Source: Octopus bimaculoides (taxonomy: Eukaryota). From it: a stretch of 64,000 nucleotides of DNA. The notes under the pieces are model-generated. The model had not been told where the DNA came from. It did no database searches and saw only the letters and a program-made list of their open reading frames with translations. The position numbers were made by a program, and so were the translations under genes. Below are positions 1,070 through 58,826 of the stretch, piece by piece (position 1 is the first letter of the stretch; each line of letters starts with the position of its first letter). The stretch lies in NCBI RefSeq assembly GCF_001194135.2, contig NC_068981.1:10539373-10603372 (forward strand), written 5' to 3'.

Positions 1070-1279
1070 CAATAAGGAATCCAGCCCGATCTCCACTTGG
1101 CATGATGGTGTCATGGCGTTGACAGGCGTATGTAATTGATTCTAACTGAAGGGCTGATAACTGGCCAGTGTCTATAGTTGAGTCAGGAAGATGAACTTTG
1201 TACCGCACATTTGGAGGTTCCACACTGGATAAAGAACTTGATTCGACCACAGCATCGGGGTGTTTTTCACCAATACGTA
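1070..1279 (-). CDS. SBNO1: Strawberry notch exon: start of the helicase-like (DExD/AAA_34) domain
   Basis: Translates (L)[69 protein letters not shown](G), closely matching remembered SBNO1 [20 protein letters not shown]...[31 protein letters not shown]. Acceptor cttgtAG at 1281-1280, donor G|GTATGT at 1069. Phase 1 at both ends. Confidence 0.97.
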
Positions 1280-1434
1280 CTACAAGAATAAATAATCGAG
1301 TGAAATGGCTAGTGGAATTACGTGTTGATATTCTTGGAAATATAATTACACATTTCAAGAGGAAAAAACAAATTATTACAAACACAAGAGACAATTACTT
1401 TGAAATGAATAAATAACAAAATAAGGATACATAC

Positions 1435-1600
1435 ATTTGGTTGGCATATATTCAGAATATGTTTCAGCTTGACCAAGTTCCTCAATCTCTTCTTCAACTT
1501 CTTCTTCTTCTGGTATGTTGTTATGATGATGATGGTGGTGATGGTGATGGTGGTGATGATGATAATGAGGTGTGCGAAGTGGCATATTGATCCCAGGAGC
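1435..1600 (-). CDS. SBNO1: Strawberry notch exon with His13 tract and acidic EEE..ELGQAETYSEYMPTK motif
   Basis: APGINMPLRTPHY(H)13NNIPEEEEVEEEIEELGQAETYSEYMPTK matches SBNO EEEEMGHAETYAEYMPIK. Acceptor tttgatAG, phase 0. Donor T|GTATGT, phase 1, joins TA of the next exon to give Leu. Intron is 155 nt. Confidence 0.95.
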
Positions 1601-1691
1601 CTATCAAATACATTTAAAAATGAAAAAACATAAGTATCATTATACTGCAATCACGAGACAAAAAAAGGTTGAGAATATGATTTAACTAAGG

Positions 1692-2019
1692 CAGGAGTTC
1701 TCAACCATTTTTTTATCTATGGACCCCTTTGATTACTATTTTATTCTAGTGGACCCCACCCCCCATAGCCATTCAATGTTTAAAAACTAGTTTTACAGAA
1801 ACTTCTTTCAAAATTCTCATTTTGTTTTTCATACATTAACTTGGATAGATTGAACTATGTAAAATGTTAGAGAAAGATACCTAGCTGTTTCTTGCAGTAC
1901 ATACAAATACAAACATCTAAAGCAAAATTTTTTCATGGGCCCTTCAAATACTATTGTAGATCCCCAAAAATCTTATATGGACCCTCAGTGGCCATATGGA
2001 CCGGGGTTGCGAACCACTG
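1692..2019. mobile_element. hAT (Charlie/Buster-like) MITE
   Basis: TIRs caggagttctcaacc / ggttgcgaaccactg. Degenerate 8-bp TSD aactaagg / atctaagc. Confidence 0.75.
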
Positions 2020-2512
2020 ATCTAAGCAGATGTTAAGAATACAATCTGAAAAACAAATCATGACTGCAAAGGGAGAATCACAATTTGTTTAATAAGTATC
2101 TAGAATTTGTTTGTCTCTTCAAAAGCCCTTTGACAGACCCTATCAATGGTTATGTATGGTTGGAAATGTACAATTAATATTTATTTCTGATCATAAATTC
2201 TAGAAAGAATATAGTCATCTGTTAAATTTGAGAGTATTTTGTAAATGCACACAAGTCAAATAATGTAACACTCCTAAATAGACATGTCCCCTAGATTTTC
2301 CCATAAACAATGGTTTTCAACATCTTTTATATCTCTCATCCTTAAAAATTCTAAATAACACAGGCCATGAGATCTGTTTTTACTTTTGTTATTCTAGATG
2401 GATTTCCAATCATGCCAAACACTGATCTTGCCCTCATTTTAAAAAAACACCCCAAAAAGTTTTTATTTTTGTGCTCAGTTGACCAACAAATTCCAGTAAA
2501 TTTCAGCTGTTA

Positions 2513-3018
2513 TCATCATCATAGTTTAACGTCCGCTTTCCATGCTAGCATGGGTTGGACGATTTGACTGAGGACTGGCAAACCAGATGGCTGCACCATG
2601 CTCCAATCTAATCTGGCAGAGTTTCTACAGCTAGATGCCCTTCCTAACGCCAACCACTCCGAGAGTGTAGTGGGTGCTCTTACGTGCCACCAGCACGAGG
2701 GCCAGTCTGGTGGTACAGACAACGGCCACGCTCAAATGATGTTTTTTACGTGCCACCTGCACAGGAGCCAGTCCAGCGGCACTGGCAACGACCTCGCTTG
2801 AATGTTTTTTTACGTGCCAGCAAAGCAACGCTGGTGACGATCACACTCAAATGGTGCTTTTTACATGCCACCAGCACGGAATCCAGACAGCTGCTCTGGC
2901 TGGCAATGATCACGCTCGAGTGGTGCTGTTAGCACTCCACTGGCACGGGTACCAGACATCGAATCTAGTTCGATTTCGATTTCAGTTGCCTCAACTGGTC
3001 TTCGCAAGCAGAGTTTAG
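2513..3018 (-). mobile_element. RTE-LINE 3' end, longer copy with about five subrepeat units
   Basis: Reverse complement of family A with (CAT)n at 2513. Extends 5' into aaactctgcttgcgaagacc..gaggcaactgaaatcgaaatcg, also seen at 43090-43220. Confidence 0.8.
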
Positions 3019-8438: not shown

Positions 8439-8480
8439 NNNNNNNNNNNNNNNNNNNNNNNNNNNNNNNNNNNNNNNNNN

Positions 8481-9118: not shown

Positions 9119-9255
9119 GACTGTATCTTTATGCAGTTGAAGGAAGCAATATTGGTACATTACCGTTGAAGAATGATTTTGAGGTCTCTGTTCATAACAT
9201 TGGGGCAGGTTTTGGTGTGAAGTAATCTAGGTTGATTGTAGGCATGGGAGGGTCC

Positions 9256-9763
9256 AGATGGACTATATGTAATCTGAACCTTTCCCCCCTTATTTTATTT
9301 TTTTTATTTTTACGGAATTCCACGTTTTAGGCTATGGAGATTCCGATTCTGAAAAAAAAAATTTCAAAANNNNNNNNNNNNNNNNNNNNNNNNNNNNNNN
9401 NNNNNNNNNNNNNNNNNNNNNNNNNNNNNNNNNNNNNNNNNNNNNNNNNNNNNNNNNNNNNNNNNNNNNNNNNNNNNNNNNNNNNNNNNNNNNNNNNNNN
9501 NNNNNNNNNNNNNNNNNNNNNNNNNNNNNNNNNNNNNNNNNNNNNNNNNNNNNNNNNNNNNNNNNNNNNNNNNNNNNNNNNNNNNNNNNNNNNNNNNNNN
9601 NNNNNNNNNNNNNNNNNNNNNNNNNNNNNNNNNNNNNNNNNNNNNNNNNNNNNNNNNNNNNNNNNNNNCAGAATCAGAATCTCCATAGCCTAAAATGTGG
9701 GATTCCGTAAAAATAAATAAATAAATAAGGGGGGGAAAGGTTCAGATTACATATAGTCCGTCT
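9256..9763. mobile_element. Long-TIR (about 100 bp) MITE/foldback element spanning an N-gap
   Basis: Left arm agatggactatatgtaatctgaacctttccccc..gctatggagattccgattctg is the reverse complement of the right arm 9669-9763. Confidence 0.75.
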
Positions 9764-10128
9764 CCGCCCACCAATGAAGTTAACAGAAAGTAGATGATTA
9801 CTGATGTAGAAGAGAAAAAGTATGGGGAATGGAATTGAAATTTGAAGCACACCATTGTAGATAGAATGTGTTTCAGAAAGTATTTCATTAGTGCATACCA
9901 TAACGGTGAGATCCAATTAAAAAGCCTAACATCACAATACTAATAGACTGCATCTAATTACAAACTGAAAGTGAGAATGATTTATATGGCAAATATTTTA
10001 ACAGAGGTGTGAGTTTCAGAATCGAATGTTCTTGGAGAGAGCCAGATAATAAGCATATTAAATATTCCATTTTTAGTAGTCTCCATTAGCAATAACTTCA
10101 ATAATAAATTAAAATGTAACCAAACCAG

Positions 10129-10929: not shown

Positions 10930-11553
10930 TGTGTATGAATTAATGTTCTTCAACTTGATATCTTCTTGTGACCAAATCCGAGACAAGTCTTTACTAGTAA
11001 CAGATGGGCGTATACCAGCCCCGTTTGTTAAGTTAGCATTCATAACATTGTTCATCTGGTTTGGTTTTGTCATGTTAGCCATTTGTGTTTTATTGACAGT
11101 AGTAGTCTGAGGACTAGGAGCTGTCACTGTTGTTTGAGACACATTCTTCACAACGTTTGAAGCGCTCGGCTTAATTTTGTTTGATGTTATTGTGTTCACT
11201 TTGACATTGCTGCCCGTCAGCCCAAGCTGACTGAGAATTTGTAATGGTTTCCCGGAGTTAACCTCAGTGAGCAATGGACTGTTGCGCCCAGTGCTACTTG
11301 TTGTAGTGATGTAGATCTTCTGTCCAGCAAATGAATTTGGTAAACCACTTTGTGAACCAACATTTTTAGGAGTTAGTGAGATTATTTTGCTACCAGTCTG
11401 ACTGATTGCAGTATTCTGAATGTAAGAATTATTAGCTCCAGTGATTTGCAATACTTGGCTATTCCCACCAGACGACTTAACAACACGAATAACCTGAGAA
11501 TTAGAGTTTGTAAGGCTGTGATTGGTTGGCTGTAAAACTACACGTGGTCTTAT
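10930..11553 (-). CDS. SBNO1: Strawberry notch large Ser/Thr/Asn/Gln-rich low-complexity exon (208 aa)
   Basis: 624-nt open frame IRPRVVLQPT...SKDLSRIWSQEDIKLKNINSYT. Acceptor ttatttcAG, donor ACA|GTAAGT, phase 0-0. The end resembles SBNO1 ARMWINDMKMRSFS, which precedes the acidic motif. Confidence 0.9.
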
Positions 11554-12584: not shown

Positions 12585-12862
12585 TGGCCAGTGCCCCTGG
12601 ACTGGCCCTTGTGTGGGTGGCACATAAAATACACCATTTTGAGCGAGGCCGTTGCCAGTACCGCCTGACTGGCCTTCGTACCAGTGGCACGTAAAAGCAC
12701 CCACTACACTATTGGAGTGGTTGGTGTTAGGAAGGGCATCCAGCTGTAGAAACTCTGCCAAATCAGATTGGAGCCTGGTGTAGCCATCTGGTTTCACCAG
12801 TCCTCAGTCAAATCGTCCAACCCATGCTAGCATGGAAAGTGGACGTTAAACGATGATGATGA
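12585..12862 (+). mobile_element. Young RTE 3' end (family A)
   Basis: Two subrepeat units plus a near-consensus tail ending aaacgatgatgat. Confidence 0.8.
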
Positions 12863-16827: not shown

Positions 16828-16950
16828 AGTAACAGGCTGTACATCAACAAGGTTGTCATTCAGAGTAAACAAGTCATCAGATTCATCAAAAGCAGTAAGA
16901 TCTCCAATTCCAGATTCATCCAAAGCAGCAGACAAAAGGTCTTTTGTAAC
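16828..16950 (-). CDS. SBNO1: Strawberry notch exon with the conserved N-terminal DLLxAALxESG motif
   Basis: VTKDLLSAALDESGIGDLTAFDESDDLFTLNDNLVDVQPVT versus human [24 protein letters not shown]. Acceptor tatttaacAG, donor ACT|GTAAGT, 123 nt, phase 0-0. It contains no Met, so an upstream ATG exon is required. Confidence 0.92.
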
Positions 16951-17369: not shown

Positions 17370-17449
17370 AGCTTACAGGATGCCCAACTTCACATATAGG
17401 ACCTGGGGTGAGGTTTTTAAGGCATTTTTCTTTGATTGCATGTCTTATA

Positions 17450-18705: not shown

Positions 18706-18759
<54 letters not shown>

Positions 18760-25332: not shown

Positions 25333-26661
25333 ACTGAATGCAGTTTCTGCCTACCAAATTTACTCACAAAGTATTGTTAAGCCAAGGATTTAGCAGAAGA
25401 CACTTGTCCAAGGTGCCATGCAGTGGGACTGAACTTGAAACTATGTAGCAGCAAAGCCAGCTTTTTAACCACACAGCCATGCCTGCACTTATGTGTATTA
25501 TACTTGAATGCACTATCAATGCATTTTTCATGGACAAGCATCAAGATATAGCTGCATCTGTCCAATTAAGTTTCATAGTGTTTTCAACATGTACAGCAAA
25601 TAGTTGAGGATCACAGATCCCTGTTGAAAAACTAAAGTATACAGAACAGCAGTAATATATATTTTTTGGTAAAAACAATCATTTATTGCTGCCTTCATCA
25701 TCANNNNNNNNNNNNNNNNNNNNNNNNNNNNNNNNNNNNNNNNNNNNNNNNNNNNNNNNNNNNNNNNNNNNNNNNNNNNNNNNNNNNNNNNNNNNNNNNN
25801 NNNNNNNNNNNNNNNNNNNNNNNNNNNNNNNNNNNNNNNNNNNNNNNNNNNNNNNNNNNNNNNNNNNNNNNNNNNNNNNNNNNNNNNNNTACATAGTGTA
25901 CTGAGTGCTTTTTTATGTGGCACCAACACCCATCAGGGTCATCATGTGGACAATACTGGTGTTTTGTAACTAGCACCCGTGTCAGGGACACATAAGAAGC
26001 ACCTTTCAAGTGCTGGGTCTGATGGAGGCAATGACAAATGACCAAGACCTTTGGCAATATACTGTGCTTGAGAAGAAGACCCATCAAGCCAACTGAAATC
26101 ATAGTCATGGCAGATACTGGTGTCATGCAAATGGCACCTGTGCCAGCAGCACATAAAAGCACCCATTACACTCTCACAGTGGTTGGCATTAGGAAGGGCA
26201 TCCAGCCGTAGAAACTATACCAAATAAGGCTGGAGTCTGGTGAAGCCTTCCAACTTACCAGCCCTGGTCAAACCGTTCAGCCCATGCCAGCATGAACAAC
26301 AGATGTTAAGTGATGATGATGATGATGATGATGATGATCTCCATCTCCATTTTCAAAACATTTGATCATGATACTTTAACCTCAAGTTCTATTAGACTAC
26401 ACACTTTATACCACACAGAGAAATTAACTCGTGCCCGGAAAATCACTTTACATAAAGTAAATAAATTGAAATTTAATTCAAAATTTGCTTTAACACAGGA
26501 AATACACACAACTGGAAATTAGTAAGAATACACTCGTGTTTAGCTCATTCACTTTGACTATTAGAATGTATTAAGTATCATAAAAAATGCAGCTACACTT
26601 GAAAATATTGGGAGGTCAAGCACTGCAAATTTAGTTTATAATACAGATTTGGTTTTGAATA

Positions 26662-27300
26662 TAGCACCACTGATGCTATATTTCTGATGAGGCAACTGCA
26701 GGAGAAATATATAGCCAAAGATAAACCTCAGTACTTGGCTTTTGTTGACTTGGAGAAAGCCTTTGACAGAGTTCCCTGTACCCTTATCTGATGGTCAATG
26801 CGGAAACTAGGGATAGACAAGTGATTAGTGAAAGCTGTACAAGCCATGTACAGGGATGCTGCCAGTGAAGGTTAGCAATGAAGCATGTTCTTCGAACTTT
26901 GAGCCTCAAAGAGGCAATGACTGGTGACCAAGACCTTTGGCGATATACTATACTTGAGAAGACCCGTCAAGCCAAGTGAAATCATAGTCATGGCTGACAC
27001 TGGTGTCACATAATTAGCACATAAAAAGCACCTTTCGAGTGTTTTGCCCTGTGGTGGCAATGGCGAATGACCGAGACCATGGCATTATGTCATGCTTGAG
27101 AAGAAGACCCAACAAGCCAAGTAAAATCACAGTCGTGGCAGATACAGGCGTCATGCAAACAGCACCCATTACACTCTTGGAGTGGTTGGCATTAGGAAGG
27201 GCATCCAGTCATGGAAACCATGCCAAATCAGACTGGAGTCTGGTTCAGCCTTCCAGTTTACCAGCTCTGGTCAAACCATCCATTAAATGATGATAATGAT
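26662..27300 (+). mobile_element. Internally deleted RTE: RT fragment fused to ORF2 C-terminus, with a duplicated 3' module
   Basis: TTDAIFLMRQLQEKY..AFVDLEKAFDRVP-coding DNA jumps at about 26880 to the KH.LRTL.L.EAMT.DQDLWRYTILEKTRQAK* end, then subrepeat, second C-terminal-like module and tail. Confidence 0.7.
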
Positions 27301-27870
27301 ATATTGGATCAGGTGATGAAAGTTACAGAGAGAGTCATAGCCCAACTAATTAGGGAGGGAGTTAGATTGGATGCAGTTTGGTTTTGTGCCAGGGAGAAGC
27401 ACCACTGACACTATATTTCTGATGAGGCAGCTGCAGGAGAAATACAGAGCCAAAGATAAACCTCTGTACTTGGCCTTTGTTGACTTGGAGAAAGCCTTTG
27501 ACAGGGTCCCTCGATCCCTTATCAGATGGTCAATGCGGAAACTAGAGATAGACGAGTGGTTGCTGACAGCTGTACAAGCCATGTACAGGGATGCTACCAG
27601 TAAGGTGAGGGTTAGCAATGAGCACAGCAAAGAATTCAGGGTACAAGTAGGGGTTCACCAAGGATCAGCCCACATCTCCCTCCTGTTCATCATATTCCTG
27701 CAGGCAATAACATAGGAATTCAAGACAGTCTGCCCCTGGGAGCTCCTCTATGCTGATGACCTTGTTCTTATAGCTGAATCACTACCTGAACTAGAAAAGA
27801 AGTTCCAGGTATGGAAGCAAGATCTAGAATCTAAAGTTAACCTAGCAAAAACCGAAGTCTTAGTAAGTTA
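27301..27870 (+). pseudogene. RTE reverse-transcriptase fragment
   Basis: QFGFVPGRSTTDTIFLMRQLQEKYRAKDKPLYLAFVDLEKAFDRVP...GVHQGS...(stop)EFKTVCPWELLYADDLVLIAES. Contains the YADD motif, an in-frame stop and frameshifts. Confidence 0.92.
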
Positions 27871-34640: not shown

Positions 34641-36237
34641 CGTATAAATGTAAATTAATAGAAACGGCTGTAAGTGAAGATGACCAATTTGCTGTTAATA
34701 ATAAACAGTTAACTTCACAATCTCCATTTTCTTCTTTTAAATGAATATAAACTGTTTTTATATATAGCTATCTTAAGGAAATTCATTCCCCAAAATATTA
34801 AGTATTGAACCAGTAGGTCCTTGGATAAAACCATCCCTTTATGAGGTTAACACAACCTCTAATTAAATTTATATACAAACATATAGAGGGGGAGATAGAG
34901 ACTAACCCATGACAGCATGGAAAACAAACACATGATCGTGATATACGTGTGTTTGTTCGACTAGAAGAGTCTAGTCGAACAAACTGACTCCGGTACTTAT
35001 TTTTTAATCCTGATATTCATTGTATCAGACTCTTTTACCGAACTGCTAGGTTACGTAAACAAACCAACACTGGTTATCAAACGGTAGATGGAGGACAAAC
35101 ACACACACCCATATACATACCTACAAATACATACATACACATAAGCATATACACACACACAGGATGAGCTTCCAAAGTTTGCGCCTGCCAAGACATTGAT
35201 CAACCGGAAGCTGTAGTTGAAAACACGTCCTCAAGGTGAAGCACAGTGAGACTGAACTCGAAAACTACGTGGCTGCAAAGCAACCTTCGTAACCACACAG
35301 CCATGCCTGTGCCTATATAAACAATTTACATAAATGTTGCATATATATATATATAATTTGCCGAATTCCATTTTGATAATAAGCGATTGAAATACATTGT
35401 TCAACCACTGATCCAAAAGTAGCTTCGACGTCAACTTCCATTTTGAATCGTTAATACACATACTTCAACAGGTAGTTTTCGTTCTATAACCTAGCTACCT
35501 TGGTGATTGATCGGGTTAAGAAAGAAGTTCACTGTCCTGCTAAAGGTTGACACACCCAATAAGATAATATCATACCTATTAGTCGATATAGATATTGACA
35601 GTGGAAAGTAAACTTGAGTGACCCAACCATCAACTTGATCCTGTTTTTAGTTACACCAAACTACATTTTCCCTAAAAAGCTTAGATTCGGCGGCAAATAT
35701 TTCAACAAAGTAAAACCGGTTTCACCCCCATACCCGAACATAAAGCACGAAGAAGAAAGTAAACTAAAATTAGTATTTCATAAAAACAAAAGAAATTGCA
35801 AAATCAATGTCAGTTGATACACACAACACTGTGTCACTTTTATCTTCAACGATTGATAATCTTTTATTTACTTGGGTGAAAGAAAAATTTATGTTAAAAA
35901 CAAAAAGGATTCGATTGAAATAATAATATCAACGACCGGTGCTGGAGTGGCTGCGTGGTAAATTTGCATCCCAACCATTGCGTGGCACCTTGGGCAAGTG
36001 TCTTCTACTATAGCCTCAGGCTGACCAAAACCTTGCGAATGGATTTGGTAGGCGGAAAATGAAAGAAGCCCATCGTATGTCTATGTATGTGATGATTAAA
36101 AAAATTAGGCTACGTAGCTGAAAACTTATATGGCGCCAACGACTGAAAATAAACACCCGGATGCATCCTTAATAGTAAATGGTCAATGTCAAAAATATTT
36201 ATTAGAAGTAACTTTCAAAATCTTATTCGTCTTCAAC

Positions 36238-36283
<46 letters not shown>

Positions 36284-37136
36284 CAAACATCAATTCGAGC
36301 AAAAGCAGCCCCTAATGTGGTCGCTAGAAATAGCACACAAAGGTAAAGAATACGCACACCACCCGTTTTCGGCGTAATCCTAACCCTAAACACTGGTATT
36401 CTTTACCTTCGCCACACAAATCGCCCTCAAAATCATACTCACTGAAAATAAGATGGGGTAGTCACAAATGGAATGCTTCTAAATCATAAATCTACTCGTT
36501 TAGAGTTGACTTGGAGTTAAATAACATCAACAACCTCGATGCTTTGTTTAATAAACTTCGTCTTCCTCGTTATAAGCAACGCGAATGCATTAATTCTAAA
36601 AAAAAAAAAAAAACCGGGTGGGGTCGGGGGACATTTTCAGAAATGGCCAGAGCCTTTTAAAGAAAACTGAAATTTGAAATATTAACAATAACAATATTCG
36701 ATTGAATATTTCTAACCTCGAGAAGAAGCCCGCCAAAGAAATGTCATGTCGTAATGTTTATGCCTTTCTCAAGGACATCGCATATCTGGGTGAATCGAAG
36801 ACGCCCCAAGAACGGAAATAAATTCACGAAATCCATATAATGCAAAATATAAATATACCTTTTGCTCGTTTCGGTCATTAGGCTGCGCCCATGCTGGGGC
36901 ACCATCTTGAGGAATTTTGGTCGAACAAATCGATCCCAGTACTTTTTTTGGTACTACCACATTTTAAATGTACGCTGTGTGGACGTGTAATGACACCCTA
37001 ACCCTCAAACTAACCTTCCCCCTTCACATCGTTACGTAGATGCATTTTTAAGTAGTGCCCTTTTTTTTAGGCCTGATAGTTATTCTATCGGTCACTTTGC
37101 CGAACGACTAAGTTACGTGGTAGCAATCAGACAAGA

Positions 37137-37171
<35 letters not shown>

Positions 37172-38829
37172 ACCCAGAACCATGTGGTTGGGAAGCAAAT
37201 TTATCACACAATTAAAATATTAAATAAGTCAATTGGAAAAGAATGCACCAAATAATGTCTTTCTCAGAAAGGAGGCTTCCTACATTATTCTTATGAGAGA
37301 AAAATGATCCTGCCTGTCAAGTGAAACTCTTTCACCCTGGGCGCGAACGTGGTTCACAGGGACTGTACATAGATAATGGTAGTTACACCCAAGTCTATCA
37401 AGAAGACCCAACCAGGTCGCTATACTTGCTAAAAATAACAAATGGAGGGAGCAGGGATACGGAATGGGCATAATTAGATAATGATTTAATAGACAGCCCA
37501 TGAAACCGAATGGTCACGGCTGGAATGCCTCAGATAATTGCCTGTTCGATCACGGTTGACTAAAAGTTAGACAAAAGTAGCTCATCCGATAATGTTAATA
37601 AACAATAAGCAATGTATATTAGCGACAGAGACAGTATTACCTCTCAATAAACAAAGAGTGAATTATAAACTAAATACTTTCATTATTATACATATCTTAG
37701 TGAATAAAAAAGCGAAAAGATACGAATTAGGGGCATTGCAAAAAAGTTATCACCAAAGTTGTTAATGATGCCAATGGCAATAATTACAAAAACAAAGTAT
37801 TTAATCTAGATAAGTCAAGAACTGTTAATGTTTAATGGCAAAAGTGAAAATATTATTCTTATTTTAGAGACGACAAAGCGGTGTGAAGGTAGTTAAAAAT
37901 AGTATATTTAAACAAACAAAAAAGAACACGTGCTCGGCAGCCTCTTTTCAAAATATAACAGTCAAGGAGGATATTATAATACGTTTCATTTAGTCTGTAA
38001 CCAACTATCTGAATTGAAATTAAATTAATAAAGTATCTTATTTACAAATTTAGTTTTTTTTATTTGTTCTAAACCACAACTTCTCTTCAAGAACAGATGA
38101 GAATACAAGGTAAAGCATTCAGTCGACCTGACCACCAAAATGCAACAAACACCTGAAAAAAAAATGCTTGATAAGAAACAAGGGCAGTAATGGACGTTAG
38201 AAGTGGTTGAGTGCCGGACAAAATCAAAACACCTTGCAGTTGGTTCGGAGTTCAAATACTGATCGATTAGATTGACAGTAGGCCTATATTAGCAATCATT
38301 GTATAGATAGTACCTTGTCAAGTTTTAGCCCAAACACTAGAAGACGGACAAATTGCCATATTAAAAAAAGACATGACTTTTTAGAAACAACAACCAAATT
38401 CCCTCAAATCATACAATACTGCCTTAAAAGGAAACGGACACATTGGACAAATAAGTGTAATCATAAAAGATACAATGCCGATACAAAAATACAAGTTGGT
38501 CAGCTCCTGATCATAGAACTATCTGATCTACGATGAAATAATATCAGTGATCCTTAATTAATAAGATATAATATTGCTGCTTTTACTGTTTTACTTCCTA
38601 CTTTTGATGAAGATTCGTGACAAGTGAATAGAGTGAAACAGAGAAATGAATTTAAAATAAAAAGACTAGGAACTAATTAAACATTAACCGCGTTAATAAG
38701 TCATCCTGAAAAAAAAAGAGGACAAGAAAAAAAAAAACTTCTCTAAAGAAATAGAGAAGACTGTTGATCGCAGTTTTCTGTGGGACCAGGATATTTCAAA
38801 GAGCTTGATGTAAGAGGCAGGGCGAAGGA

Positions 38830-38863
<34 letters not shown>

Positions 38864-39700
38864 GTGTGTGTGTGTGTGCTTCAATGTACAACACAAGCGA
38901 TGAAGAAGAAAAAAAACAATCTTCAGTTTTTCATAGAAAGATACAACAATAATAATCCTAGACTATTGTTAGCAGAAAAAGATACTGTGATTTCCCATCA
39001 TTACAAAAAATATTGACAAACAAACTGAAGAAAGAACCGACAAATCATTTAAAAATATATATATATATATATAATATATACACATATATATATACATCTA
39101 TATATACATACATCTATATATATATATATATNNNNNNNNNNNNNNNNNNNNNNNNNNNNNNNNNNNNNNNNNNNNNNNNNNNNNNNNNNNNNNNNNNNNN
39201 NNNNNNNNNNNNNNNNNNNNNNNNNNNNNNNAATATATTTGATGATTATGTGTGTATATGTTTGTGTGTGCGTGTATATGTTTGATTGTGTGTGCGTATA
39301 TATGTTTGATTGTGTATATATATTTGATTGTGTATAAGTGAGTGTATGTATGTATATAAATATATATATAATCATATATAATCGTTCTAACAGCATGTGA
39401 TCTAGGTTTCATTTTTTTCTTTCTCTATCTCAGAAAACATTATTTAATGTTATCTTCTGTCCAACATATGTTACCTATTTTTGCCCCTTTTTTCGTTTTA
39501 GACATAAAAAAGTGGCTTTAAATTTATTTTTGATGAAATTTAAGTCACTTTATGATTCTTGGGGGAAACGTTTTTTAATGTACTTTATATTATCAAACCG
39601 TGATCAGAAATAATATCCCCGACTTTTTAAGCCACAATTTAACTAATTTTACTGACCTTTATATTTTAAATTTTTATGTAGCTAACACCTGGACTTGTCC

Positions 39701-39713
39701 TTTCCCGCCATCT
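39701..39713. promoter_or_regulatory. Overlapping E2F-like (TTTCCCGC) and YY1-like (CCGCCATCT) motif
   Basis: TTTCCCGCCATCT seen directly. The minus strand reads gagATGGCGGGAAAGGACAAGTCCAG|gtgttag, resembling a first-exon end. Short motif, could be chance. Confidence 0.35.
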
Positions 39714-39756
39714 CAAACATTTGTGTGTATGTATTAATACGTACGCGTGTGTGTCC

Positions 39757-39791
<35 letters not shown>

Positions 39792-40634
39792 NNNNNNNNN
39801 NNNNNNNNNNNNNNNNNNNNNNNNNNNNNNNNNNNNNNNNNNNNNNNNNNNNNNNNNNNNNNNNNNNNNNNNNNNNNNNNNNNNNNNNNNNNNNNNNNNN
39901 NNNNNNNNNNNNNNNNNNNNNNNNNNNNNNNNNNNNNNNNNNNNNNNNNNNNNNNNNNNNNNNNNNNNNNNNNNNNNNNNNNNNNNNNNNNNNNNNNNNN
40001 NNNNNNNNNNNNNNNNNNNNNNNNNNNNNNNNNNNNNNNNNNNNNNNNNNNNNNNNNNNNNNNNNNNNNNNNNNNNNNNNNNNNNNNNNNNNNNNNNNNN
40101 NNNNNNNNNNNNNNNNNNNNNNNNNNNNNNNNNNNNNNNNNNNNNNNNNNNNNNNNNNNNNNNNNNNNNNNNNNNNNNNNNNNNNNNNNNNNNNNNNNNN
40201 NNNNNNNNNNNNNNNNNNNNNNNNNNNNNNNNNNNNNNNNNNNNNNNNNNNNNNNNNNNNNNNNNNNNNNNNNNNNNNNNNNNNNNNNNNNNNNNNNNNN
40301 NNNNNNNNNNNNNNNNNNNNNNNNNNNNNNNNNNNNNNNNNNNNNNNNNNNNNNNNNNNNNNNNNNNNNNNNNNNNNNNNNNNNNNNNNNNNNNNNNNNN
40401 NNNNNNNNNNNNNNNNNNNNNNNNNNNNNNNNNNNNNNNNNNNNNNNNNNNNNNNNNNNNNNNNNNNNNNNNNNNNNNNNNNNNNNNNNNNNNNNNNNNN
40501 NNNNNNNNNNNNNNNNNNNNNNNNNNNNNNNNNNNNNNNNNNNNNNNNNNNNNNNNNNNNNNNNNNNNNNNNNNNNNNNNNNNNNNNNNNNNNNNNNNNN
40601 NNNNNNNNNNNNNNNNNNNNNNNNNNNNNNNNNN
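39792..40634. other. Assembly gap in the centre of the intergenic/promoter region
   Basis: 843 N, preceded by a (TA)n tract. Other gaps: 8439-8480, 9370-9668, 25704-25889, 39132-39231, 42575-42920, 45932-45941, 47687-47696, about 54397-54584, 55612-55837, 56912-57319, 59511-60325. Confidence 0.99.
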
Positions 40635-40737
40635 TGGCAGCAAGTTGTTGCATACATTGTTAGTTATATGTTTGTATATATCTCTCTACCGTGTATGTAT
40701 AATGTGTAATATATATGTATCCGTAGTATGGTGTATG

Positions 40738-40776
<39 letters not shown>

Positions 40777-42920
40777 CGTATGCTGTAAAACTGTTGATTA
40801 CGAATCGAGCTTCAAGTATTTTTAGAGTTTTAGCTATTTTACCATTTAAAAAAGTTGACCGTTATTGTCTTTGTTGTAAGTTGCACAACGGACTGATTTG
40901 TTGTTTGACGTCTTTTCAGAACCAAATGTTACTAAATATACAGTTTATATTTATGATGATTAATTAATTTTGTGTATTTTATGACTAATTGGACCCTAAT
41001 GGATCCCTAATTTAGTTATGTAGCCTGTTTTGTTAATATGAAAAACAGTTTTTGAAGATAGATTTTATTTTACTTTATTAGAGGTGAAATATTCGAATAT
41101 TTCAGTAAGAATTTTTCATTTTCCTTCTCTCTTTCTCTCTCTCTGTATATATATATGATATGTATATTATAGTGGGGTAGGCCGGTTTATGGGATTTCTC
41201 GGATTTGTGTATTTCTACAAACGATATATATATATTTATAATTGGAGGTATGTGGAAATTTTGGGTAGTCATTATTTTTTCTCGTGACGTTACGTTTACC
41301 TATTACTAAAAATAATTGTGACTAGGCAAAAATAAATGTGCAAGAGGTGGGAAATGGTGATTGTTCGAGTCAATTTAGAACGTATGCTTGTTGGGCTAAT
41401 AATTTCATCGAGCTAATTGGAAACCTATTAAAATGATACTTGAATATTGCTGCTAGTTTAATAAACTCCAAGAACTGAAATATTAAAAAAATTTTAATTC
41501 TCTGGGGTCGAATTCGAAATAGGGATAGAAATATCGGTATCACCATTACTTCGCTAATCAATCGATTTGGACGAGTTTGTAACTTGGGTATTTCGATTCT
41601 CTGTTTTTTTGTTTTTTTACTTTCTTTATTATGATGATTAATAATATATTGATTTCTTCTGTGACTCACAATAAACAAACAAAGTTAGCCTTAGATTTAT
41701 CTCCGTGCACGACGCTTGACAGTTTATATCTACCCAGGGTGGATGGATGAAAGGCGAAGTCGATTTTCTTTTCTATGCGATTCTAGACCACAATGAAACT
41801 TTAAAATATTAAGCATTTTATTACATAAGCCCGATGGCGTTCTTACCATTTCTAACCGTTTCTTATATCTGAGAATCTTTCTTCAGAGCTAAGACATTTT
41901 GACAACCCCCCCCCCAAAAAAAAAACTACATCTAAGTGATCCAAAGTAGAAGTCGAAATTTGGTTAATGGAATTTTTCCTTTTTTTTTCTCTGGTTATAA
42001 ACTAAGTCAACCCTTCTATGACTATCATAACAAAACTGAGTTTGTGTTCTTTTACATTGGCACAAAGCCACAAATTAAAGGTTTGAAGGGTGAAGTGAAA
42101 TATCTTATAGGGCATCATGTGAAACCTCGTTTTCACGTTTCTGTCTTGTATTACAGTTGTTACAAGGGAGTATTTGTAATTTGATGTTGAACAATAATCT
42201 CAAAAGTTCAATCCTAATTCCTAAAATACTTTTTTCCGATTTTCTCACCAGTGAGTATGTACTTCGGCAAAATAACCGTATATACTTGTGTACACACACA
42301 CACACACACACACACACATATTCAAGGAAAATTCACGCCTCACTTACAGGCGTGTACAGTGTTGTTTCAAATTAGCCATTTAACCATGTAACTAACGTTG
42401 ACTGCACGAAATATTTATGCATGAGGAAGTGATCTGGCTTTAAAATAGTTGTGTGTATATATATATATATATACACACGCGACTGTCAAATTCCTTTCAT
42501 GGGGTATTAGTTAACTTTTAGGCCATGGTAGAAGACACTGTCTCACTTGGAAACTCGTGGTTGTGAAGTGAATTNNNNNNNNNNNNNNNNNNNNNNNNNN
42601 NNNNNNNNNNNNNNNNNNNNNNNNNNNNNNNNNNNNNNNNNNNNNNNNNNNNNNNNNNNNNNNNNNNNNNNNNNNNNNNNNNNNNNNNNNNNNNNNNNNN
42701 NNNNNNNNNNNNNNNNNNNNNNNNNNNNNNNNNNNNNNNNNNNNNNNNNNNNNNNNNNNNNNNNNNNNNNNNNNNNNNNNNNNNNNNNNNNNNNNNNNNN
42801 NNNNNNNNNNNNNNNNNNNNNNNNNNNNNNNNNNNNNNNNNNNNNNNNNNNNNNNNNNNNNNNNNNNNNNNNNNNNNNNNNNNNNNNNNNNNNNNNNNNN
42901 NNNNNNNNNNNNNNNNNNNN

Positions 42921-46810: not shown

Positions 46811-46846
<36 letters not shown>

Positions 46847-47451: not shown

Positions 47452-47771
47452 GTCGTAATATTGAGAACGGTGAGTGCCAGCCAAATCAAGAGCATACTCC
47501 TCCAAGTGTCCTTTTGACCCCAGATTCTTCACCCACTAGTAGTATTGCCTCGTACGAGAAACCTGATCTGTACACCGTTGATCCTGGGAACCCCACAAAC
47601 ACAGAAAATGGCAATACCTGCAATCCATTGCTATTGCTCAAGTCACCTTCAGACAAGCCTTCCAGGAAAAAAAAAGGCCGTACAAANNNNNNNNNNAAAG
47701 CGCCGAGTTGTTTCAACACATCGAAATTCATTGTCACCGAAGCAAAAGCCAAAAACATCAACCCGGCAAAA
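47452..47771 (+). CDS. KMT5A: KMT5A N-terminal exon (TP/SP-rich, Lys/Arg-rich), interrupted by a 10-N assembly spacer
   Basis: Acceptor ttacttttAG. Reads RNIENGECQPNQEHTPPSVLLTPDSSP...SRKKKGRT before the Ns and KRRVVSTHRNSLSPKQKPKTSTRQ(K) after them in a different frame. Donor AA|GTAAGT is phase 2 in the post-gap frame, matching the next exon. Confidence 0.8.
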
Positions 47772-53432: not shown

Positions 53433-53529
53433 GAAGAATGATAATAATAATAATCTTCAGGGACAAACTTCTGTCACAGATTATTTTCCCGTCAGAAGAA
53501 GCAACAGACAGACAAAGAAATTTTTGGAG
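53433..53529 (+). CDS. KMT5A: KMT5A exon containing the PIP degron
   Basis: KNDNNNNLQGQTSVTDYFPVRRSNRQTKKFLE versus human QNRKLTDFYPVRRSSRKSKAELQ. Acceptor gtcatacAG (phase 2), donor GAG|GTGAGC (phase 0). Confidence 0.95.
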
Positions 53530-54352: not shown

Positions 54353-54584
54353 GTGTGTGTGTGTATAGGCAAACTGCAATCTTTGTGGCTTTCTAANNNN
54401 NNNNNNNNNNNNNNNNNNNNNNNNNNNNNNNNNNNNNNNNNNNNNNNNNNNNNNNNNNNNNNNNNNNNNNNNNNNNNNNNNNNNNNNNNNNNNNNNNNNN
54501 NNNNNNNNNNNNNNNNNNNNNNNNNNNNNNNNNNNNNNNNNNNNNNNNNNNNNNNNNNNNNNNNNNNNNNNNNNNNNNNNNNNN

Positions 54585-54814: not shown

Positions 54815-55583
54815 GGTCGTTGCCAGCGTCGCCTTACTGGCACGTGCCAGTGACATGTGAAAAACAACATTCGAGAGTGGTTGTTGCCAGTGCCGCCGGA
54901 CTGGCTCCCATGCAGGTAGCACCTAAAAAACACGTTTTGAGTGTGGTTATTGCCAGATCTGCCTGACTGGCCCTCGTGCCAGTTGCATGTAAAAGCACCC
55001 ACTACAGTGTCGGAGTGGTTGGTATTAGGAAGGGCATCCAGCTGTAGAAACTTTGCCAGATCAGATTGAGCCTGGTGCAGCCTTCTGGCTCACCAGTCAA
55101 ATCATCCAACCCGTGCCAGCATGGAAAGCGGATATTAAATGACGATGATGATGATACATATATAAAAAATTTTAAAAACATTTGCACTGAAATCATATAT
55201 GTATATATATATATATGTATGTATGTGTATACATGTATCAGTTTGGCTGCTTGTTTCTCTGGAGACTGTCAGAATAATGTAGATGTCTCTGATGAGACTT
55301 TAATAAGGTTCAAAAATCAATTAAATATATATATATATGTTCAATTCCTGGCATGGGAACACTTACTTACTACACTCTCGGACAGTACCGCCTGACTGGC
55401 CTTCTTGCCGGTGGCACGTAAAAGCACCCACTACACTCTCTGAGTGGTTGGCATTAGGAAGGCATCCACCTGTAGAAACTCTGCCAAATCAGATTGGATC
55501 CTGGTGCAGCTATCTGGTTTCACCAGTCCTCAGTCAAATCGTCCAACCCATGCTAGCAGGGAAAGCGGACGTTAAACAATGAT
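54815..55583 (+). mobile_element. Two tandem RTE 3' ends (54815-55155 and about 55380-55583)
   Basis: Each has subrepeats, core and tail. Confidence 0.8.
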
Positions 55584-55857
55584 TTTATATATATATATAT
55601 ATATATATATANNNNNNNNNNNNNNNNNNNNNNNNNNNNNNNNNNNNNNNNNNNNNNNNNNNNNNNNNNNNNNNNNNNNNNNNNNNNNNNNNNNNNNNNN
55701 NNNNNNNNNNNNNNNNNNNNNNNNNNNNNNNNNNNNNNNNNNNNNNNNNNNNNNNNNNNNNNNNNNNNNNNNNNNNNNNNNNNNNNNNNNNNNNNNNNNN
55801 NNNNNNNNNNNNNNNNNNNNNNNNNNNNNNNNNNNNNAAAGCGGACGTTAAACAATG

Positions 55858-55898
<41 letters not shown>

Positions 55899-56579
55899 CC
55901 GGAGTAAGCACATATATGCAAAACAAGGTGGAAAAAATAATACTCAAATACCAGAGGTAGAGTAATATGCTTTATTGAGAAGCAGCAGAAATATCACAAA
56001 AACTGTTACTCAGAGTTTCACATTCCCATTCAGCTGCTTTTCAATAAAGTGTCATCTAATCTGTTGTGTGTATCTTTCTAAAGTTGCAAGATAGTTTGCT
56101 GATTATAGGCCTACCATCCTTTCAAGGTCCACCAGTCATAGTCTACTTACACAGCAAACCATGGCCTACATCTAACGCGGAAACTGTGTAAAGCTTAAGC
56201 TGATTTGACAGGCTTCTACATTCTATTGTTCTATTTCATGCCAATTCTTTAAATCGATTCTGTTGACCAAGTGAACCCACAGTTGTTTTCCCATACTTCC
56301 ATTTGCAACAGAAATCTCATGACTTGGCAGCATTCATCCAGTTTAGTGAACCTTTATATCGGTGTTTACTATTTTTATCATTAAATATTATTAGGATTGT
56401 ATAAAATGAATGAAAATATTTTGTGTATTTTAGAAGTATATCCAATTGCAGATAAATTTTAGCAACGAGATCTGATATGGACCCCAGGTGAGAAAAGCTG
56501 CCTTATATGACAAATTTGTCAGCTTGAAATAGCAGTCAAATCTGCTTCAGACCACATCATACATTCTATAAAGAGAATA

Positions 56580-57557
56580 TTAACTCTTTCGTTACCAACC
56601 CGGCTTTGGCTCTGAGTAGAAATGTCTTGTTTTCATGAGTTTGGAATTAATATCTTCCACCAAACCTTAATCACAATTTATGTTCCTAACACTAGCTGAA
56701 TGATAACTAAGTTATTTTACTAAATTCTGATTGTTACCAGCGTCGCTTTACTGGCACTTACATCGGTGGCACGTGAAAAAACATTTGACCGAGGTCGTTG
56801 CCAGTGCCGCTGGACTGGCTCCTGTGCAGGTGGCACATAAAAAACACCATTTTGAGCGTGGCCGTTGCCAGTACCACCTGACTGGCCCTCGTGCCAGTAG
56901 CACATAAAAGCNNNNNNNNNNNNNNNNNNNNNNNNNNNNNNNNNNNNNNNNNNNNNNNNNNNNNNNNNNNNNNNNNNNNNNNNNNNNNNNNNNNNNNNNN
57001 NNNNNNNNNNNNNNNNNNNNNNNNNNNNNNNNNNNNNNNNNNNNNNNNNNNNNNNNNNNNNNNNNNNNNNNNNNNNNNNNNNNNNNNNNNNNNNNNNNNN
57101 NNNNNNNNNNNNNNNNNNNNNNNNNNNNNNNNNNNNNNNNNNNNNNNNNNNNNNNNNNNNNNNNNNNNNNNNNNNNNNNNNNNNNNNNNNNNNNNNNNNN
57201 NNNNNNNNNNNNNNNNNNNNNNNNNNNNNNNNNNNNNNNNNNNNNNNNNNNNNNNNNNNNNNNNNNNNNNNNNNNNNNNNNNNNNNNNNNNNNNNNNNNN
57301 NNNNNNNNNNNNNNNNNNNGGCAACGATCTCGCTCGAAAATCCTACAACAACCCCACACAAGAGCCAGTTCAGGGGCACCGGCAACGATCTCGCTCGAAG
57401 AAATTTCATGTGTCACCCGCACAAGAGCCAGTCCAGGGGCACTGGCAACGATCTCACTCGAAAATCCTCATGGCGGATGCTAAACGGTGATGATGATTTA
57501 AAGTAATTGAAAGAAACACAGAGCATCTCAGAATACATAGAGTAACGAAAGGGTTAA
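56580..57557. mobile_element. TTAA MITE family G split by an RTE-subrepeat insertion (56729-57496)
   Basis: Compared with the intact copy at 50414-50631 (..ctaaattctttgttatatttaaag..), the insertion replaces ttgttata between ctaaattct and tttaaag. Confidence 0.75.
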
Positions 57558-57958
57558 ATGCTCATAACAAAACAGGCTGTTCACAGCTAGAACAATTCCG
57601 GGCACAGGTCTGCTCTATCAAGATTAACATGAGGCTAAACACTCATTCACCAGTTTTGTTTTTCCTCTCTTCAATTTCCAGTTTCTTATCTTTTGTGTGT
57701 AAATTACACAATCTTCCACACTGCTTCTTTCTACTACTAAATTCTCTCGGAAAGAATTGACCAACCCAAGACTAAATAAGACATTTACCCAAGATGTCAT
57801 GCTTTGACACTAAACCCAAAATCAAACGGTTACAAAGTACAAGCATGCCTGCGCTTGAAATAATATAACGGCTTCGGTTAACTAAACAATAGTGTTGGAA
57901 CCTAAAGGCAATTAGAAATAGTGTCAGTATTTACCTCGGTGTGTATTGTATTTTACAG

Positions 57959-58018
57959 TGGAAAAGATATCAAGATATTGAATCTGCTGTTCTCAACAGG
58001 ACAGAGGATGGTCTAAAG
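57959..58018 (+). CDS. KMT5A: KMT5A 60-nt pre-SET (n-SET) exon
   Basis: ttttacAG|WKRYQDIESAVLNRTEDGLK|GTAAAT. 20 codons aligning without gaps to human SEERKRIDELIESGKEEGMK. Phase 0-0. Not in the ORF track. Confidence 0.92.
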
Positions 58019-58635
58019 GTAAATTGCTTTTGTTTCTAAATTTAGAATTATTTTGTCTCGACTGTTCTCTAATTTAAAGTGTTGTGATGACCATTTAACT
58101 TTTGTAATACTAACCCACCCGGGACTACCCCTAGATCTGTGATACAAACTGTTTTTATGTGTTCTGAATCAAAACCTTCTTGCAAATATTATCATGCAGA
58201 TGAAGGTTGGCAAATAGAAAGGTATCCATCTGTAGAAAACTGCATTATCGAATTCCATCTGACTGATGCAAGCATGGAAAGTGGATATTGAAATGATAAT
58301 GTGTGTTTGTATTTCTTTGTCTTAACATCACACACTGATTGTAAACAAGTGTCACAATCATTCAGACTGTCATGCATTTTTCGTCTTCCACGAGAATGCC
58401 TGCCTTCATGCTATATTACCTTATTTGGAAAAAGATGAGTGTTGGTGAACAAAAGAGTATCCAGCCTTAGAAAATTTTCCTCGACAGATTTCACCCGACT
58501 CATACAAACATGGAGAAATGGACATTAAAACAAGGATGCCTACAACCAATGCAATTTCAAAAATTAAAATTTGACTTGTAGTGTCTTCCTGGTTATTAAT
58601 TTGTATACATAACTGTTTTCTCTTTTCTGCTTTAG

Positions 58636-58826
58636 GTGGTTGATTTCAATGGTAAAGGGCGAGGTGTGGTAGCCACCAGATCGTTCAAGAAAGGAGAATT
58701 TGTTGTAGAATATGCTGGAGATCTTATAAGTTATCCAGCAGCCAAAGATCGAGAACGTGTTTATGCTTCGGACTCTGGTTTTGGCTGCTATATGTACTAT
58801 TTTGTCTACAATAGCAAAAATTATTG
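58636..58826 (+). CDS. KMT5A: KMT5A SET-domain exon (N-terminal half of SET)
   Basis: VVDFNGKGRGVVATRSFKKGEFVVEYAGDLISYPAAKDRERVYASDSGFGCYMYYFVYNSKNY(C), with PR-Set7/SETD8 signatures GKGRGV, VVEYxGDL and GCYMYYF. Acceptor gctttAG, donor TG|GTAAGT (phase 2), 191 nt. Confidence 0.97.

What the first reader, a model, noticed from the sequence alone, without database searches (positions are those of the whole stretch)
1070..58826. Strawberry notch and KMT5A/PR-Set7 are head-to-head, as in the human genome: candidate ancient microsyntenic pair
Seen in sequence: SBNO exons lie on the minus strand (16950 down to 1070), KMT5A exons on the plus strand (47452 up to 58826), and no other protein-coding gene is recognisable between them. 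Recalled knowledge: human SBNO1 (minus) and KMT5A/SETD8 (plus) are adjacent and divergent on 12q24.31, whereas Drosophila sno and PR-Set7 are on different chromosomes. Inference: if this is a cephalopod, the linkage and orientation would predate the protostome-deuterostome split and have survived in a lineage known for extensive genome rearrangement. That points to a shared cis-regulatory constraint coupling a helicase-like transcriptional co-regulator to the H4K20me1 writer. I do not know whether this pair is already catalogued.
Basis: partly seen in the sequence, partly recalled or inferred. Interest (0 to 1): 0.82.

Follow-up and report, generated by a model that had tools for sequence, protein, structure and literature searches.

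The report
SBNO and KMT5A divergent neighbours
The window really does hold the front parts of a Strawberry-notch gene and a KMT5A/PR-Set7 gene pointing away from each other with no other recognisable gene between them, as in human; this is most likely one more inherited ancient gene-neighbour pair of a kind already known in hundreds, and the claimed regulatory coupling is not shown.

Summary
Observation confirmed, to the base. SBNO exons lie on the minus strand (16950-16828, 11553-10930, 1600-1435, 1279-1070). KMT5A exons lie on the plus strand (47452-47771, 53433-53529, 57959-58018, 58636-58826). All have canonical splice sites and compatible phases. Both genes are truncated: SBNO runs off the left edge, and KMT5A lacks the C-terminal half of its SET domain. 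Each also lacks its start-codon exon, which must lie inside the 30.5 kb "intergenic" stretch.

That stretch holds SINE-like repeats, LINE reverse-transcriptase remnants and five assembly gaps, but no other Pfam-recognisable gene. A repeat-poor block at 35.2-42.6 kb keeps its CpGs (o/e 0.93 against 0.33-0.46 beside it) and is the likely site of both promoters.

Human adjacency (CDK2AP1, SBNO1, KMT5A, RILPL2) is documented. One unidentified compact-genome animal also links the genes, but in tandem and with DDX52 between them. Several other compact genomes show no SBNO within 10 kb of KMT5A.

Ancient linkage is therefore likely (about 0.85). A strict shared cis-regulatory constraint is unproven and partly contradicted. 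Cephalopod origin could not be verified. I could not establish whether the pair is already catalogued, because the supplement of Irimia et al. 2012 is not held. Interest is modest.

The parts
1070..1279 (-). SBNO exon S5: (L)[18 protein letters not shown]...DRAGFLIG, the start of the AAA_34 domain. It ends G|gt, and the gene continues beyond the left edge of the window.
   Evidence: PF13872 5.2e-21. The acceptor tag|TAC joins T+TA = Leu from exon S4.
1435..1600 (-). SBNO exon S4: APGINMPLRTPHY(H)13NNIPEEEEVEEEIEELGQAETYSEYMPTK.
   Evidence: Acceptor gatag|GCT in phase 0; donor AAAT|gtatgt in phase 1.
10930..11553 (-). SBNO exon S3: 208 codons of low-complexity, poorly conserved N-terminal region.
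   Evidence: Acceptor tttcag|ATA and donor ACA|gtaagt, phase 0 to 0.
16828..16950 (-). SBNO exon S2: VTKDLLSAALDESGIGDL..., the conserved N-terminal motif. It is not the first exon.
   Evidence: Acceptor aacag|GTT with an in-frame TAA directly upstream; donor ACT|gtaagt. L007 SBNO starts MSVTSRPGGTGTMGGDILSQALLQTGL.
26642..27868 (+). Remnants of LINE reverse transcriptase: dead transposon copies, not a host gene.
   Evidence: RVT_1 7.7e-12; three segments match.
35201..42574 (.). CpG-retaining, repeat-poor block. It is the candidate unmethylated promoter and intergenic region for both genes. It contains gaps 39132-39231 and 39792-40634 and abuts gap 42575-42920.
   Evidence: CpG o/e is 0.93 and repeats 11% here, against o/e 0.33 (16951-35200) and 0.46 (42921-47451) with repeats 27-33%. 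The reading as methylation footprints relies on PMC9476566 and is an inference.
25704..25889 (.). Assembly gap between the two genes. It is one of five; the others are 39132-39231, 39792-40634, 42575-42920 and 45932-45941.
   Evidence: Continuity is untestable. Flanks of most gaps are (TA)n/(TG)n or SINE sequence.
47452..47771 (+). KMT5A exon A: a Ser/Pro-rich then basic N-terminal region with a 10-N gap inside it (47687-47696). It is not the first exon.
   Evidence: Acceptor ttttag|GT and donor AAA|gtaagt. The post-gap frame KRRVVSTHRNSLSPKQKPKTSTRQ ends AA| and joins G of exon B. The alternative frame needs a weak acceptor at 53461.
53433..53529 (+). KMT5A exon B: KNDNNNNLQGQTSVTDYFPVRRSNRQTKKFLE, which includes a PIP-degron-like motif Q-T-S-V-T-D-Y-F-x-x-R-R.
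57959..58018 (+). KMT5A exon C: WKRYQDIESAVLNRTEDGLK.
   Evidence: It aligns to human ERKRIDELIESGKEEGMK. Phase 0 to 0.
58636..58826 (+). KMT5A exon D: the N-terminal half of the SET domain, VVDFNGKGRGVVATRSF...CYMYYFVYNSKNY. It ends TG|gt, a split Cys codon.
   Evidence: The same exon end is seen in about 100 animal fragments that read through to '...YW'.

Best explanation
What it is. The window carries the 5' portions of two genuine single-copy chromatin-regulator genes. One is a Strawberry-notch (SBNO) helicase-like gene on the minus strand. The other is the H4K20 monomethyltransferase gene KMT5A/PR-Set7 on the plus strand. They are transcribed away from each other.

Origin. Their adjacency is most likely homologous to the human SBNO1-KMT5A adjacency, inherited from at least the protostome-deuterostome ancestor. 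I put this at about 0.85. It makes the pair an ordinary member of the class of conserved ancestral microsyntenic pairs.

How it most likely works (inferred, about 0.45).
- The missing first exons and both promoters sit in or at the edges of one unmethylated, repeat-poor block of at most 7.4 kb (35.2-42.6 kb).
- The CpG-depleted DNA on either side is methylated gene body, that is, the long first introns of the two broadly expressed genes.
- A rearrangement that separates the genes would have to break inside a few kilobases dense with promoter and regulatory sequence of both genes.
- This small, costly target slows separation without requiring obligatory co-regulation.
- Where rearrangement is fast the pair is inverted, interrupted or lost: the L007 organism, several compact genomes, and flies.

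Shown: gene identities, exon structure, orientation, absence of another recognisable gene, human adjacency, and linkage in a third lineage.

Inferred: homology of the adjacency, promoter location, methylation reading, and any selective constraint.

The confidence of 0.5 is for the whole statement including the mechanism.
For: - Gene identities and exon models.
- No other Pfam-recognisable gene in 16780-47242. No structured RNA gene apart from one marginal tRNA-like hit.
- Human order CDK2AP1-SBNO1-KMT5A-RILPL2: PMC11867633. Shared LD/eQTL block: PMC9960278.
- Third lineage, L007: KMT5A 9818-10457, DDX52 orthologue 10959-13081 and SBNO from 14024, all on the plus strand. Its proteins are 54-64% identical to both window and human in the compared exons.
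- My estimate of chance: two given genes within one intervening gene is about 4/N, roughly 2e-4. About 17 distinct loci were examined.
- CpG o/e is 0.93 and repeats are few in 35.2-42.6 kb, against 0.33-0.46 in the flanks. Octopus methylation is on gene bodies of broadly expressed genes and absent from promoters (PMC9476566).
- Irimia et al. 2012 report 595 non-paralogous pairs conserved across metazoans, mostly 5'-5'. Human intergenic distances average 29 kb for 5'-5' pairs with conserved orientation (PMC3514665).
Against: - The orientation is not conserved in L007, where DDX52 lies between the genes.
- No SBNO exon lies within the available flanks (up to 10 kb) of KMT5A in other compact loci: L006, L011/L012 (neighbours Oxidored-like and Kelch/BTB), L016 and L017-L019. 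None of 80 metagenome loci has both genes.
- The start-codon exons and transcription starts were not found, so the shared promoter block is conjecture.
- The methylation reading assumes a cephalopod- or mollusc-type methylome for an unidentified species.
- Five gaps lie between the genes.
- Co-expression, chromatin contacts and non-coding conservation could not be tested.
- The pair was not found in the catalogues I could read. Those are incomplete, or list blocks of three or more genes.
Confidence: 0.5

Rival explanations
1. The adjacency is ancestral but selectively neutral. It is simply one of the ancestral neighbour pairs that have not yet been hit by a breakpoint in these two lineages. 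There is no shared regulation.
For: - L007 shows local inversion and insertion of DDX52 without apparent loss of either gene.
- The pair is absent within 10 kb in several compact genomes.
- Fast-evolving lineages lose most such pairs: flies keep 46 and nematodes 12 of 595 (PMC3514665).
- Nothing in the window demonstrates a shared element.
Against: - Adjacency and 5'-5' orientation are retained in a genome that looks like a coleoid cephalopod. That group is reported to be heavily rearranged (PMC9023564, abstract).
- 5'-5' pairs are the class enriched for co-expression and conserved orientation.
- Linkage survives in L007 even after local rearrangement.
Confidence: 0.35
2. The two genes became neighbours independently in vertebrates and in this lineage, by convergence or chance.
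For: My rough estimate: if about 8,000 orthologous neighbour pairs are compared between two genomes, about one coincidental shared adjacency is expected genome-wide.
Against: - Real conserved pairs number in the hundreds (595), so a shared adjacency is far more likely inherited.
- The orientation matches as well.
- An independent third lineage (L007) has the genes within 4 kb of each other.
Confidence: 0.07
3. The adjacency is an assembly artefact: a scaffold misjoin across one of the five gaps between the genes.
For: - Gaps lie at 25704-25889, 39132-39231, 39792-40634, 42575-42920 and 45932-45941.
- Continuity across them cannot be checked from the sequence.
- The first exons of both genes are unaccounted for.
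Against: - A random misjoin reproducing the human neighbour and orientation is very improbable.
- Gap flanks are (TA)n/(TG)n microsatellites or SINE copies, typical of local unsequenced repeats.
- Gaps inside the two genes are spanned by exons in correct order and phase, so scaffolding is locally sound.
Confidence: 0.04

Closest known systems
Conserved ancestral microsyntenic pairs (CAMPs) of Irimia et al. 2012 (PMC3514665)
   Same: Two unrelated genes are closely linked in distant animal lineages. They are 5'-5' oriented in the window and in human. The intergenic distance is in the tens of kilobases or less, and L007 has at most one intervening gene.
   Different: Irimia's criterion is linkage in at least 4 of 11 major lineages. 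Here only three lineages are documented, and one of them is unidentified. The orientation is not conserved in L007. I could not see whether the pair is in their list, because the supplement is not held.
Classical bidirectional-promoter pairs such as HSPD1-HSPE1
   Same: The arrangement is head-to-head and conserved between distant animals. A single CpG-retaining block lies between the two transcription units.
   Different: Such pairs have start sites less than 1 kb apart and proven shared promoters. Here the start sites are unknown. The first recognisable exons are 30.5 kb apart, the candidate block is up to 7.4 kb, and the human genes are about 19 kb apart with a lncRNA and a miRNA between them (distance from memory; order from PMC11867633).
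Genomic regulatory blocks (a developmental regulator plus a bystander gene carrying its enhancers)
   Same: Both involve long introns and a conserved neighbour relation. SBNO has developmental signalling roles in flies.
   Different: No conserved non-coding elements were or could be identified. Both genes are broadly expressed chromatin factors rather than a tissue-specific regulator with a bystander.

Membership tests
KMT5A / PR-Set7 / SETD8 (H4K20 monomethyltransferase) | SET domain whose closest relatives are KMT5A and not other SET families | tested here: met
   All top PDB matches are KMT5A/SETD8 (2.5e-23; 1e-29 for the spliced model). The next family scores 3.7e-9. Pfam SET 3.1e-6.
KMT5A / PR-Set7 / SETD8 (H4K20 monomethyltransferase) | PIP-degron-type motif (h-T-D-[FY]-[FY]-x-x-[KR][KR]) upstream of the SET domain, at the same spacing as in human | tested here: met
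   QTSVTDYFPVRRSNR in exon B aligns to human KLTDFYPVRRSSR. There are 28 residues between RRSxRxxK and GKGRG in both. The functional meaning of the motif comes from my knowledge of the family.
KMT5A / PR-Set7 / SETD8 (H4K20 monomethyltransferase) | Catalytic C-terminal half of the SET domain (NHS motif, ELxYDYG, post-SET) | not testable with these tools
   No such exon lies on the plus strand after 58826. It is either in gap 59511-60325 or beyond position 64000.
Strawberry notch (SBNO) helicase-like proteins | N-terminal P-loop domain AAA_34 (PF13872) | tested here: met
   PF13872 5.2e-21 covers profile positions 1-65 of 306. All 39 database relatives of exon S5 carry PF13872. Only the first fifth of the domain is in the window.
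Strawberry notch (SBNO) helicase-like proteins | Walker A loop (GDGAGVGKGR) and the C-terminal Helicase_C_4 domain | not testable with these tools
   These exons lie beyond the left edge of the window. They are present downstream of the equivalent exon in L005, L007 and L015.
Conserved ancestral microsyntenic pair (Irimia et al. 2012) | [quoted passage not shown] | tested here: met
   Window: no recognisable gene between them. Human: no protein-coding gene between them. L007: one gene, DDX52.
Conserved ancestral microsyntenic pair (Irimia et al. 2012) | Linkage present in at least four of eleven major metazoan lineages | tested here: inconclusive
   Three lineages are documented: vertebrate, the window's species, and the unidentified L007 animal. 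Other loci give only 10 kb or less of flank.
Bidirectional-promoter gene pair | Transcription start sites less than about 1 kb apart on opposite strands | tested here: inconclusive
   The first exons were not identified. The candidate promoter block of 7.4 kb contains two gaps.
Co-regulated CAMP | Co-expression above matched neighbouring pairs, and conserved orientation in all lineages that keep the pair | tested here: not met
   The orientation differs in L007, where the genes are co-directional. Co-expression is not testable here.

The most novel reading that the evidence does not exclude
SBNO and KMT5A form a deeply conserved, functionally coupled divergent unit. On this reading one shared unmethylated control region drives both a Notch/EGFR-pathway helicase-like co-regulator and the H4K20me1 writer. 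The unit has been kept head-to-head since before the protostome-deuterostome split, even through the coleoid genome reshuffling, because their expression must be co-ordinated.
Probability: 0.2. Interest if true: 0.5.

Novelty: new member of a known kind. Interest (0 to 1): 0.3.

Why it matters
If the linkage proves widespread, it adds one well-defined 5'-5' pair of chromatin regulators to the roughly 600 known ancient microsyntenic pairs. It would offer a compact case, with a candidate control block of at most about 7 kb, for testing whether such pairs persist through shared promoters or merely through small breakpoint targets. It does not open a new kind of biology. Hundreds of comparable pairs are described, and the pair is demonstrably breakable. 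Practically, the exon models and gap notes are useful for annotating this draft assembly.

Tried and rejected
1. Reference proteins. The protein database returned only exon-sized fragments called on anonymous contigs and no full-length animal proteins. I therefore used human SBNO1 and KMT5A sequences written from memory, only as tblastn probes. I confirmed identities independently with Pfam and PDB.

2. Cross-species adjacency. One metagenome scan gave 80 loci, of which only about 10 exceed 8 kb.
- Only L007 holds both genes.
- L004, L005, L009, L010 and L015 are uninformative, because introns are long relative to the 10 kb flank.
- L013 is a chimeric contig of bacterial and animal sequence.

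3. Catalogues, no hit in any.
- Irimia 2012 main text has no mention, and its supplement is not held.
- Davila-Lopez 2010 supplements have no hit.
- Schmidbaur 2022 supplements have no hit.
- Robert 2022 supplements have no hit, but the relevant file was cut when stored, and I believe it lists multi-gene blocks rather than pairs.
- Simakov 2013, Belcaid 2019 and the 2026 coleoid 3D-genome paper have no supplements held.
- Albertin 2015 and Zimmermann 2019 are not held.
- No paper co-mentions strawberry notch and PR-Set7.

4. Finding the start-codon exons by ATG, open frame, donor and phase gave nothing convincing. ATG|GTAAGA at 41849-41847 (-) would give MVTKDLL..., but about one such match is expected by chance.

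5. Identifying the species of the window and of L007. Accession searches in the literature found nothing, and the cluster look-up gave no names.

I replaced it with 139 stop-free segments packed into an alignment.

8. I could not document the human strand orientation from the literature. It rests on memory.

Full report
**The sequence.** The window is 64 kb of eukaryotic DNA at 38% G+C. It has 12 runs of N, and about 28% of it lies in short interspersed repeat families that recur up to about 30 times within the window itself. It looks like a draft assembly of a SINE-rich invertebrate genome. The closest database relatives of its two conserved exons are anonymous contigs at 90-94% amino-acid identity. 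I could not establish the species, so 'cephalopod' remains a plausible assumption.

**SBNO.** Four exons lie on the minus strand.
- S5, 1279-1070, encodes (L)[18 protein letters not shown]...DRAGFLIG. All 39 relatives found carry PF13872, with E down to 3.5e-33.
- Reading the DNA gives canonical splice sites and compatible phases for S2 16950-16828, S3 11553-10930 (624 nt, low complexity), S4 1600-1435 (with a run of 13 His) and S5.
- The spliced 374 residues hit AAA_34 at 5.2e-21, positions 1-65 of 306.
- S2 begins at an acceptor with an in-frame TAA directly upstream. The start codon is therefore in an unidentified exon further upstream, at coordinates above 16950.
- After S5 the gene runs off the left edge.
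- Gaps 8439-8480 and 9370-9668 fall in the S3-S4 intron. S3 ends and S4 begins in phase 0, and the joined sequence parallels the human N-terminal region, so no exon need be hidden there.

**KMT5A.** Four exons lie on the plus strand.
- D, 58636-58826, is the first half of the SET domain. Its solved-structure matches are all KMT5A/SETD8 (2.5e-23), far ahead of other SET families at 3.7e-9.
- D ends TG|gt, splitting a Cys codon. About 100 animal fragments end at the same place.
- B, 53433-53529, carries QTSVTDYFPVRRSNR, a PIP-degron-type motif.
- C, 57959-58018, was found by a motif search.
- The post-gap part of A joined to B, C and D aligns to residues 163-282 of human KMT5A isoform 2 with a single 3-residue gap, E 1e-29.
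- The three gaps 54397-54584, 55612-55837 and 56912-57319 all lie in the B-C intron and hide no exon.
- A, 47452-47771, starts at an acceptor and has no Met, so at least one 5' exon lies upstream.
- The 10-N gap at 47687-47696 is inside exon A. As written, the upstream frame stays open through the gap to a phase-0 donor that fits only a weak acceptor at 53461. The other post-gap frame (KRRVVSTHRNSLSPKQKPKTSTRQ, ending AA|) fits the strong acceptor at 53433. I prefer the second model, which implies that the true gap length is not 10, but this is not settled.
- The exons for the C-terminal SET half are not in the window.

**Between the genes.** The 30.5 kb from 16951 to 47451 is not strictly intergenic, because it must contain the first exon or exons of both genes.
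- I found no other gene. 139 non-repeat stop-free segments of at least 48 aa gave only reverse-transcriptase remnants and one borderline hit.
- Rfam gave one marginal tRNA-like hit, and ARAGORN found no tRNA.
- Five gaps, about 1.5 kb by estimate, lie here, and continuity across them cannot be tested.
- The flanks of most gaps are microsatellites or SINE copies, as expected for local unsequenced repeats.
- A block at 35.2-42.6 kb stands out. Its CpG o/e is 0.93 and repeats cover 11%. The left flank has o/e 0.33 and the right 0.46, with 27-33% repeats.
- In octopus, methylation marks the bodies of broadly expressed genes and spares promoters (PMC9476566).
- If that applies here, the depleted flanks are first introns and the block holds both promoters. 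The divergent starts would then be a few kilobases apart rather than 30. This is an inference; a rule-based search for the start exons found nothing convincing.

**Other genomes.**
- *Human.* A gene list in chromosomal order for 12q24.31 reads CDK2AP1, SBNO1, MIR8072, SBNO1-AS1, KMT5A, RILPL2 (PMC11867633). The genes also share an LD/eQTL block (PMC9960278). The minus/plus orientation and the roughly 19 kb spacing are from my memory.
- *Anonymous animal contigs.* I could examine at most 10 kb on each side of 12 look-ups and 80 metagenome loci.
- *L007.* This 205-kb ENA contig from a compact genome has KMT5A (9818-10457), a DDX52 orthologue (10959-13081; PDB 3dkp, 6.3e-67) and SBNO (from 14024), all on one strand.
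  - Its proteins are 54-64% identical to both window and human in the compared exons, so it represents a third deep lineage.
  - Chance proximity of two specified genes is of the order of 2e-4 per genome (my estimate).
- *Negative loci.* Compact loci L006, L011/L012, L016 and L017-L019 show no SBNO exon within the available flanks. L011/L012 has other identifiable neighbours. None of the 80 metagenome loci has both genes. The remaining loci are uninformative.

**Interpretation.** Ancestral linkage is likely, for these reasons.
- The same neighbour and the same orientation are seen in two distant lineages.
- A third lineage keeps the genes linked.
- Hundreds of true conserved pairs are known (595; most 5'-5'; PMC3514665), against about one coincidence expected genome-wide.

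The further claim of a shared cis-regulatory constraint is not demonstrated. The arrangement has been inverted and interrupted in L007 and lost within 10 kb elsewhere, and nothing about expression or chromatin could be tested. My preferred mechanism is a small, functionally dense divergent promoter block that is costly to break and so slows separation without making it impossible. Neutral survival is nearly as likely.

**Novelty.** This is a new (or possibly already listed) member of a known kind. I found it in no accessible catalogue, but the one pairwise catalogue that matters, the supplement of Irimia et al. 2012, is not held. Interest is modest.

Noticed in passing
window 1520-1580 (-), within SBNO exon S4: The predicted SBNO N-terminal region contains an uninterrupted run of 13 histidines (HYHHHHHHHHHHHHHNN), encoded by mixed CAT/CAC codons. 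It sits just before the acidic stretch and the AETYSEYMP motif.
   Followed up: no
window 16688-16747 (-): The only Rfam match at gathering threshold is a marginal tRNA-like hit (29.4 bits against a threshold of 29). ARAGORN calls no tRNA. It lies in the SBNO S2-S3 intron near a SINE copy, so it may be a tRNA-derived SINE head.
   Followed up: partly
window 9243-9351 and 9669-9776: Gap 9370-9668 is flanked by 70-nt inverted-repeat arms (84% complementary). This may be a foldback element or a palindromic assembly artefact centred on the gap.
   Followed up: partly
window 55560-55611 and 55838-55890: The same sequence (AAAGCGGACGTTAAACAATGATTTTATATATA...) occurs on both sides of gap 55612-55837. 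This looks like a duplicated gap edge at a (TA)n microsatellite.
   Followed up: no
window 41847-41849 (-): ATG|GTAAGA in a good Kozak context (AGAAATGG) lies inside the CpG-retaining block. Spliced to exon S2 it would give MVTKDLLSAAL..., compared with human MVEPGQDLLLAAL (the human sequence from memory). About one such match is expected by chance in 30 kb.
   Followed up: partly
window 26642-26788 (+) and 27350-27712 (+): Two neighbouring fragments of the same LINE reverse transcriptase carry near-identical peptides (...TTDxIFLMRQLQEKYxAKDKPxYLAFVDLEKAFDRVP...). This suggests a local duplication or nested insertion.
   Followed up: no
L007 10959-13081 (+): In the unidentified compact-genome animal a DDX52 (ROK1-type) DEAD-box helicase gene sits between KMT5A and SBNO. 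All three are on one strand within about 9 kb.
   Followed up: yes
L004 2876-7116: A 4.2-kb satellite of 69-bp units (about 61 copies by length, 92-95% matches) fills an intron of KMT5A in another anonymous animal. It is open in several frames and was called as 'genes'.
   Followed up: partly
L013 1-8573 versus 10001-10664: One ENA/NCBI contig joins typical bacterial genes (molybdopterin oxidoreductase, sigma-70, PDZ protease) to animal KMT5A exons. It is probably a chimeric metagenome assembly.
   Followed up: no
L001, L002, L003: Three long contigs of one sample (1.27 Mb, 566 kb, 185 kb) each carry an identical KMT5A exon with similar flanks. They may be haplotypes or recent segmental duplicates in that organism.
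   Followed up: no
window 59330-59510: A long (ATCT)n/(GTCT)n microsatellite abuts the 815-N gap downstream of KMT5A exon D. The missing last exons may lie in or beyond that gap.
   Followed up: no
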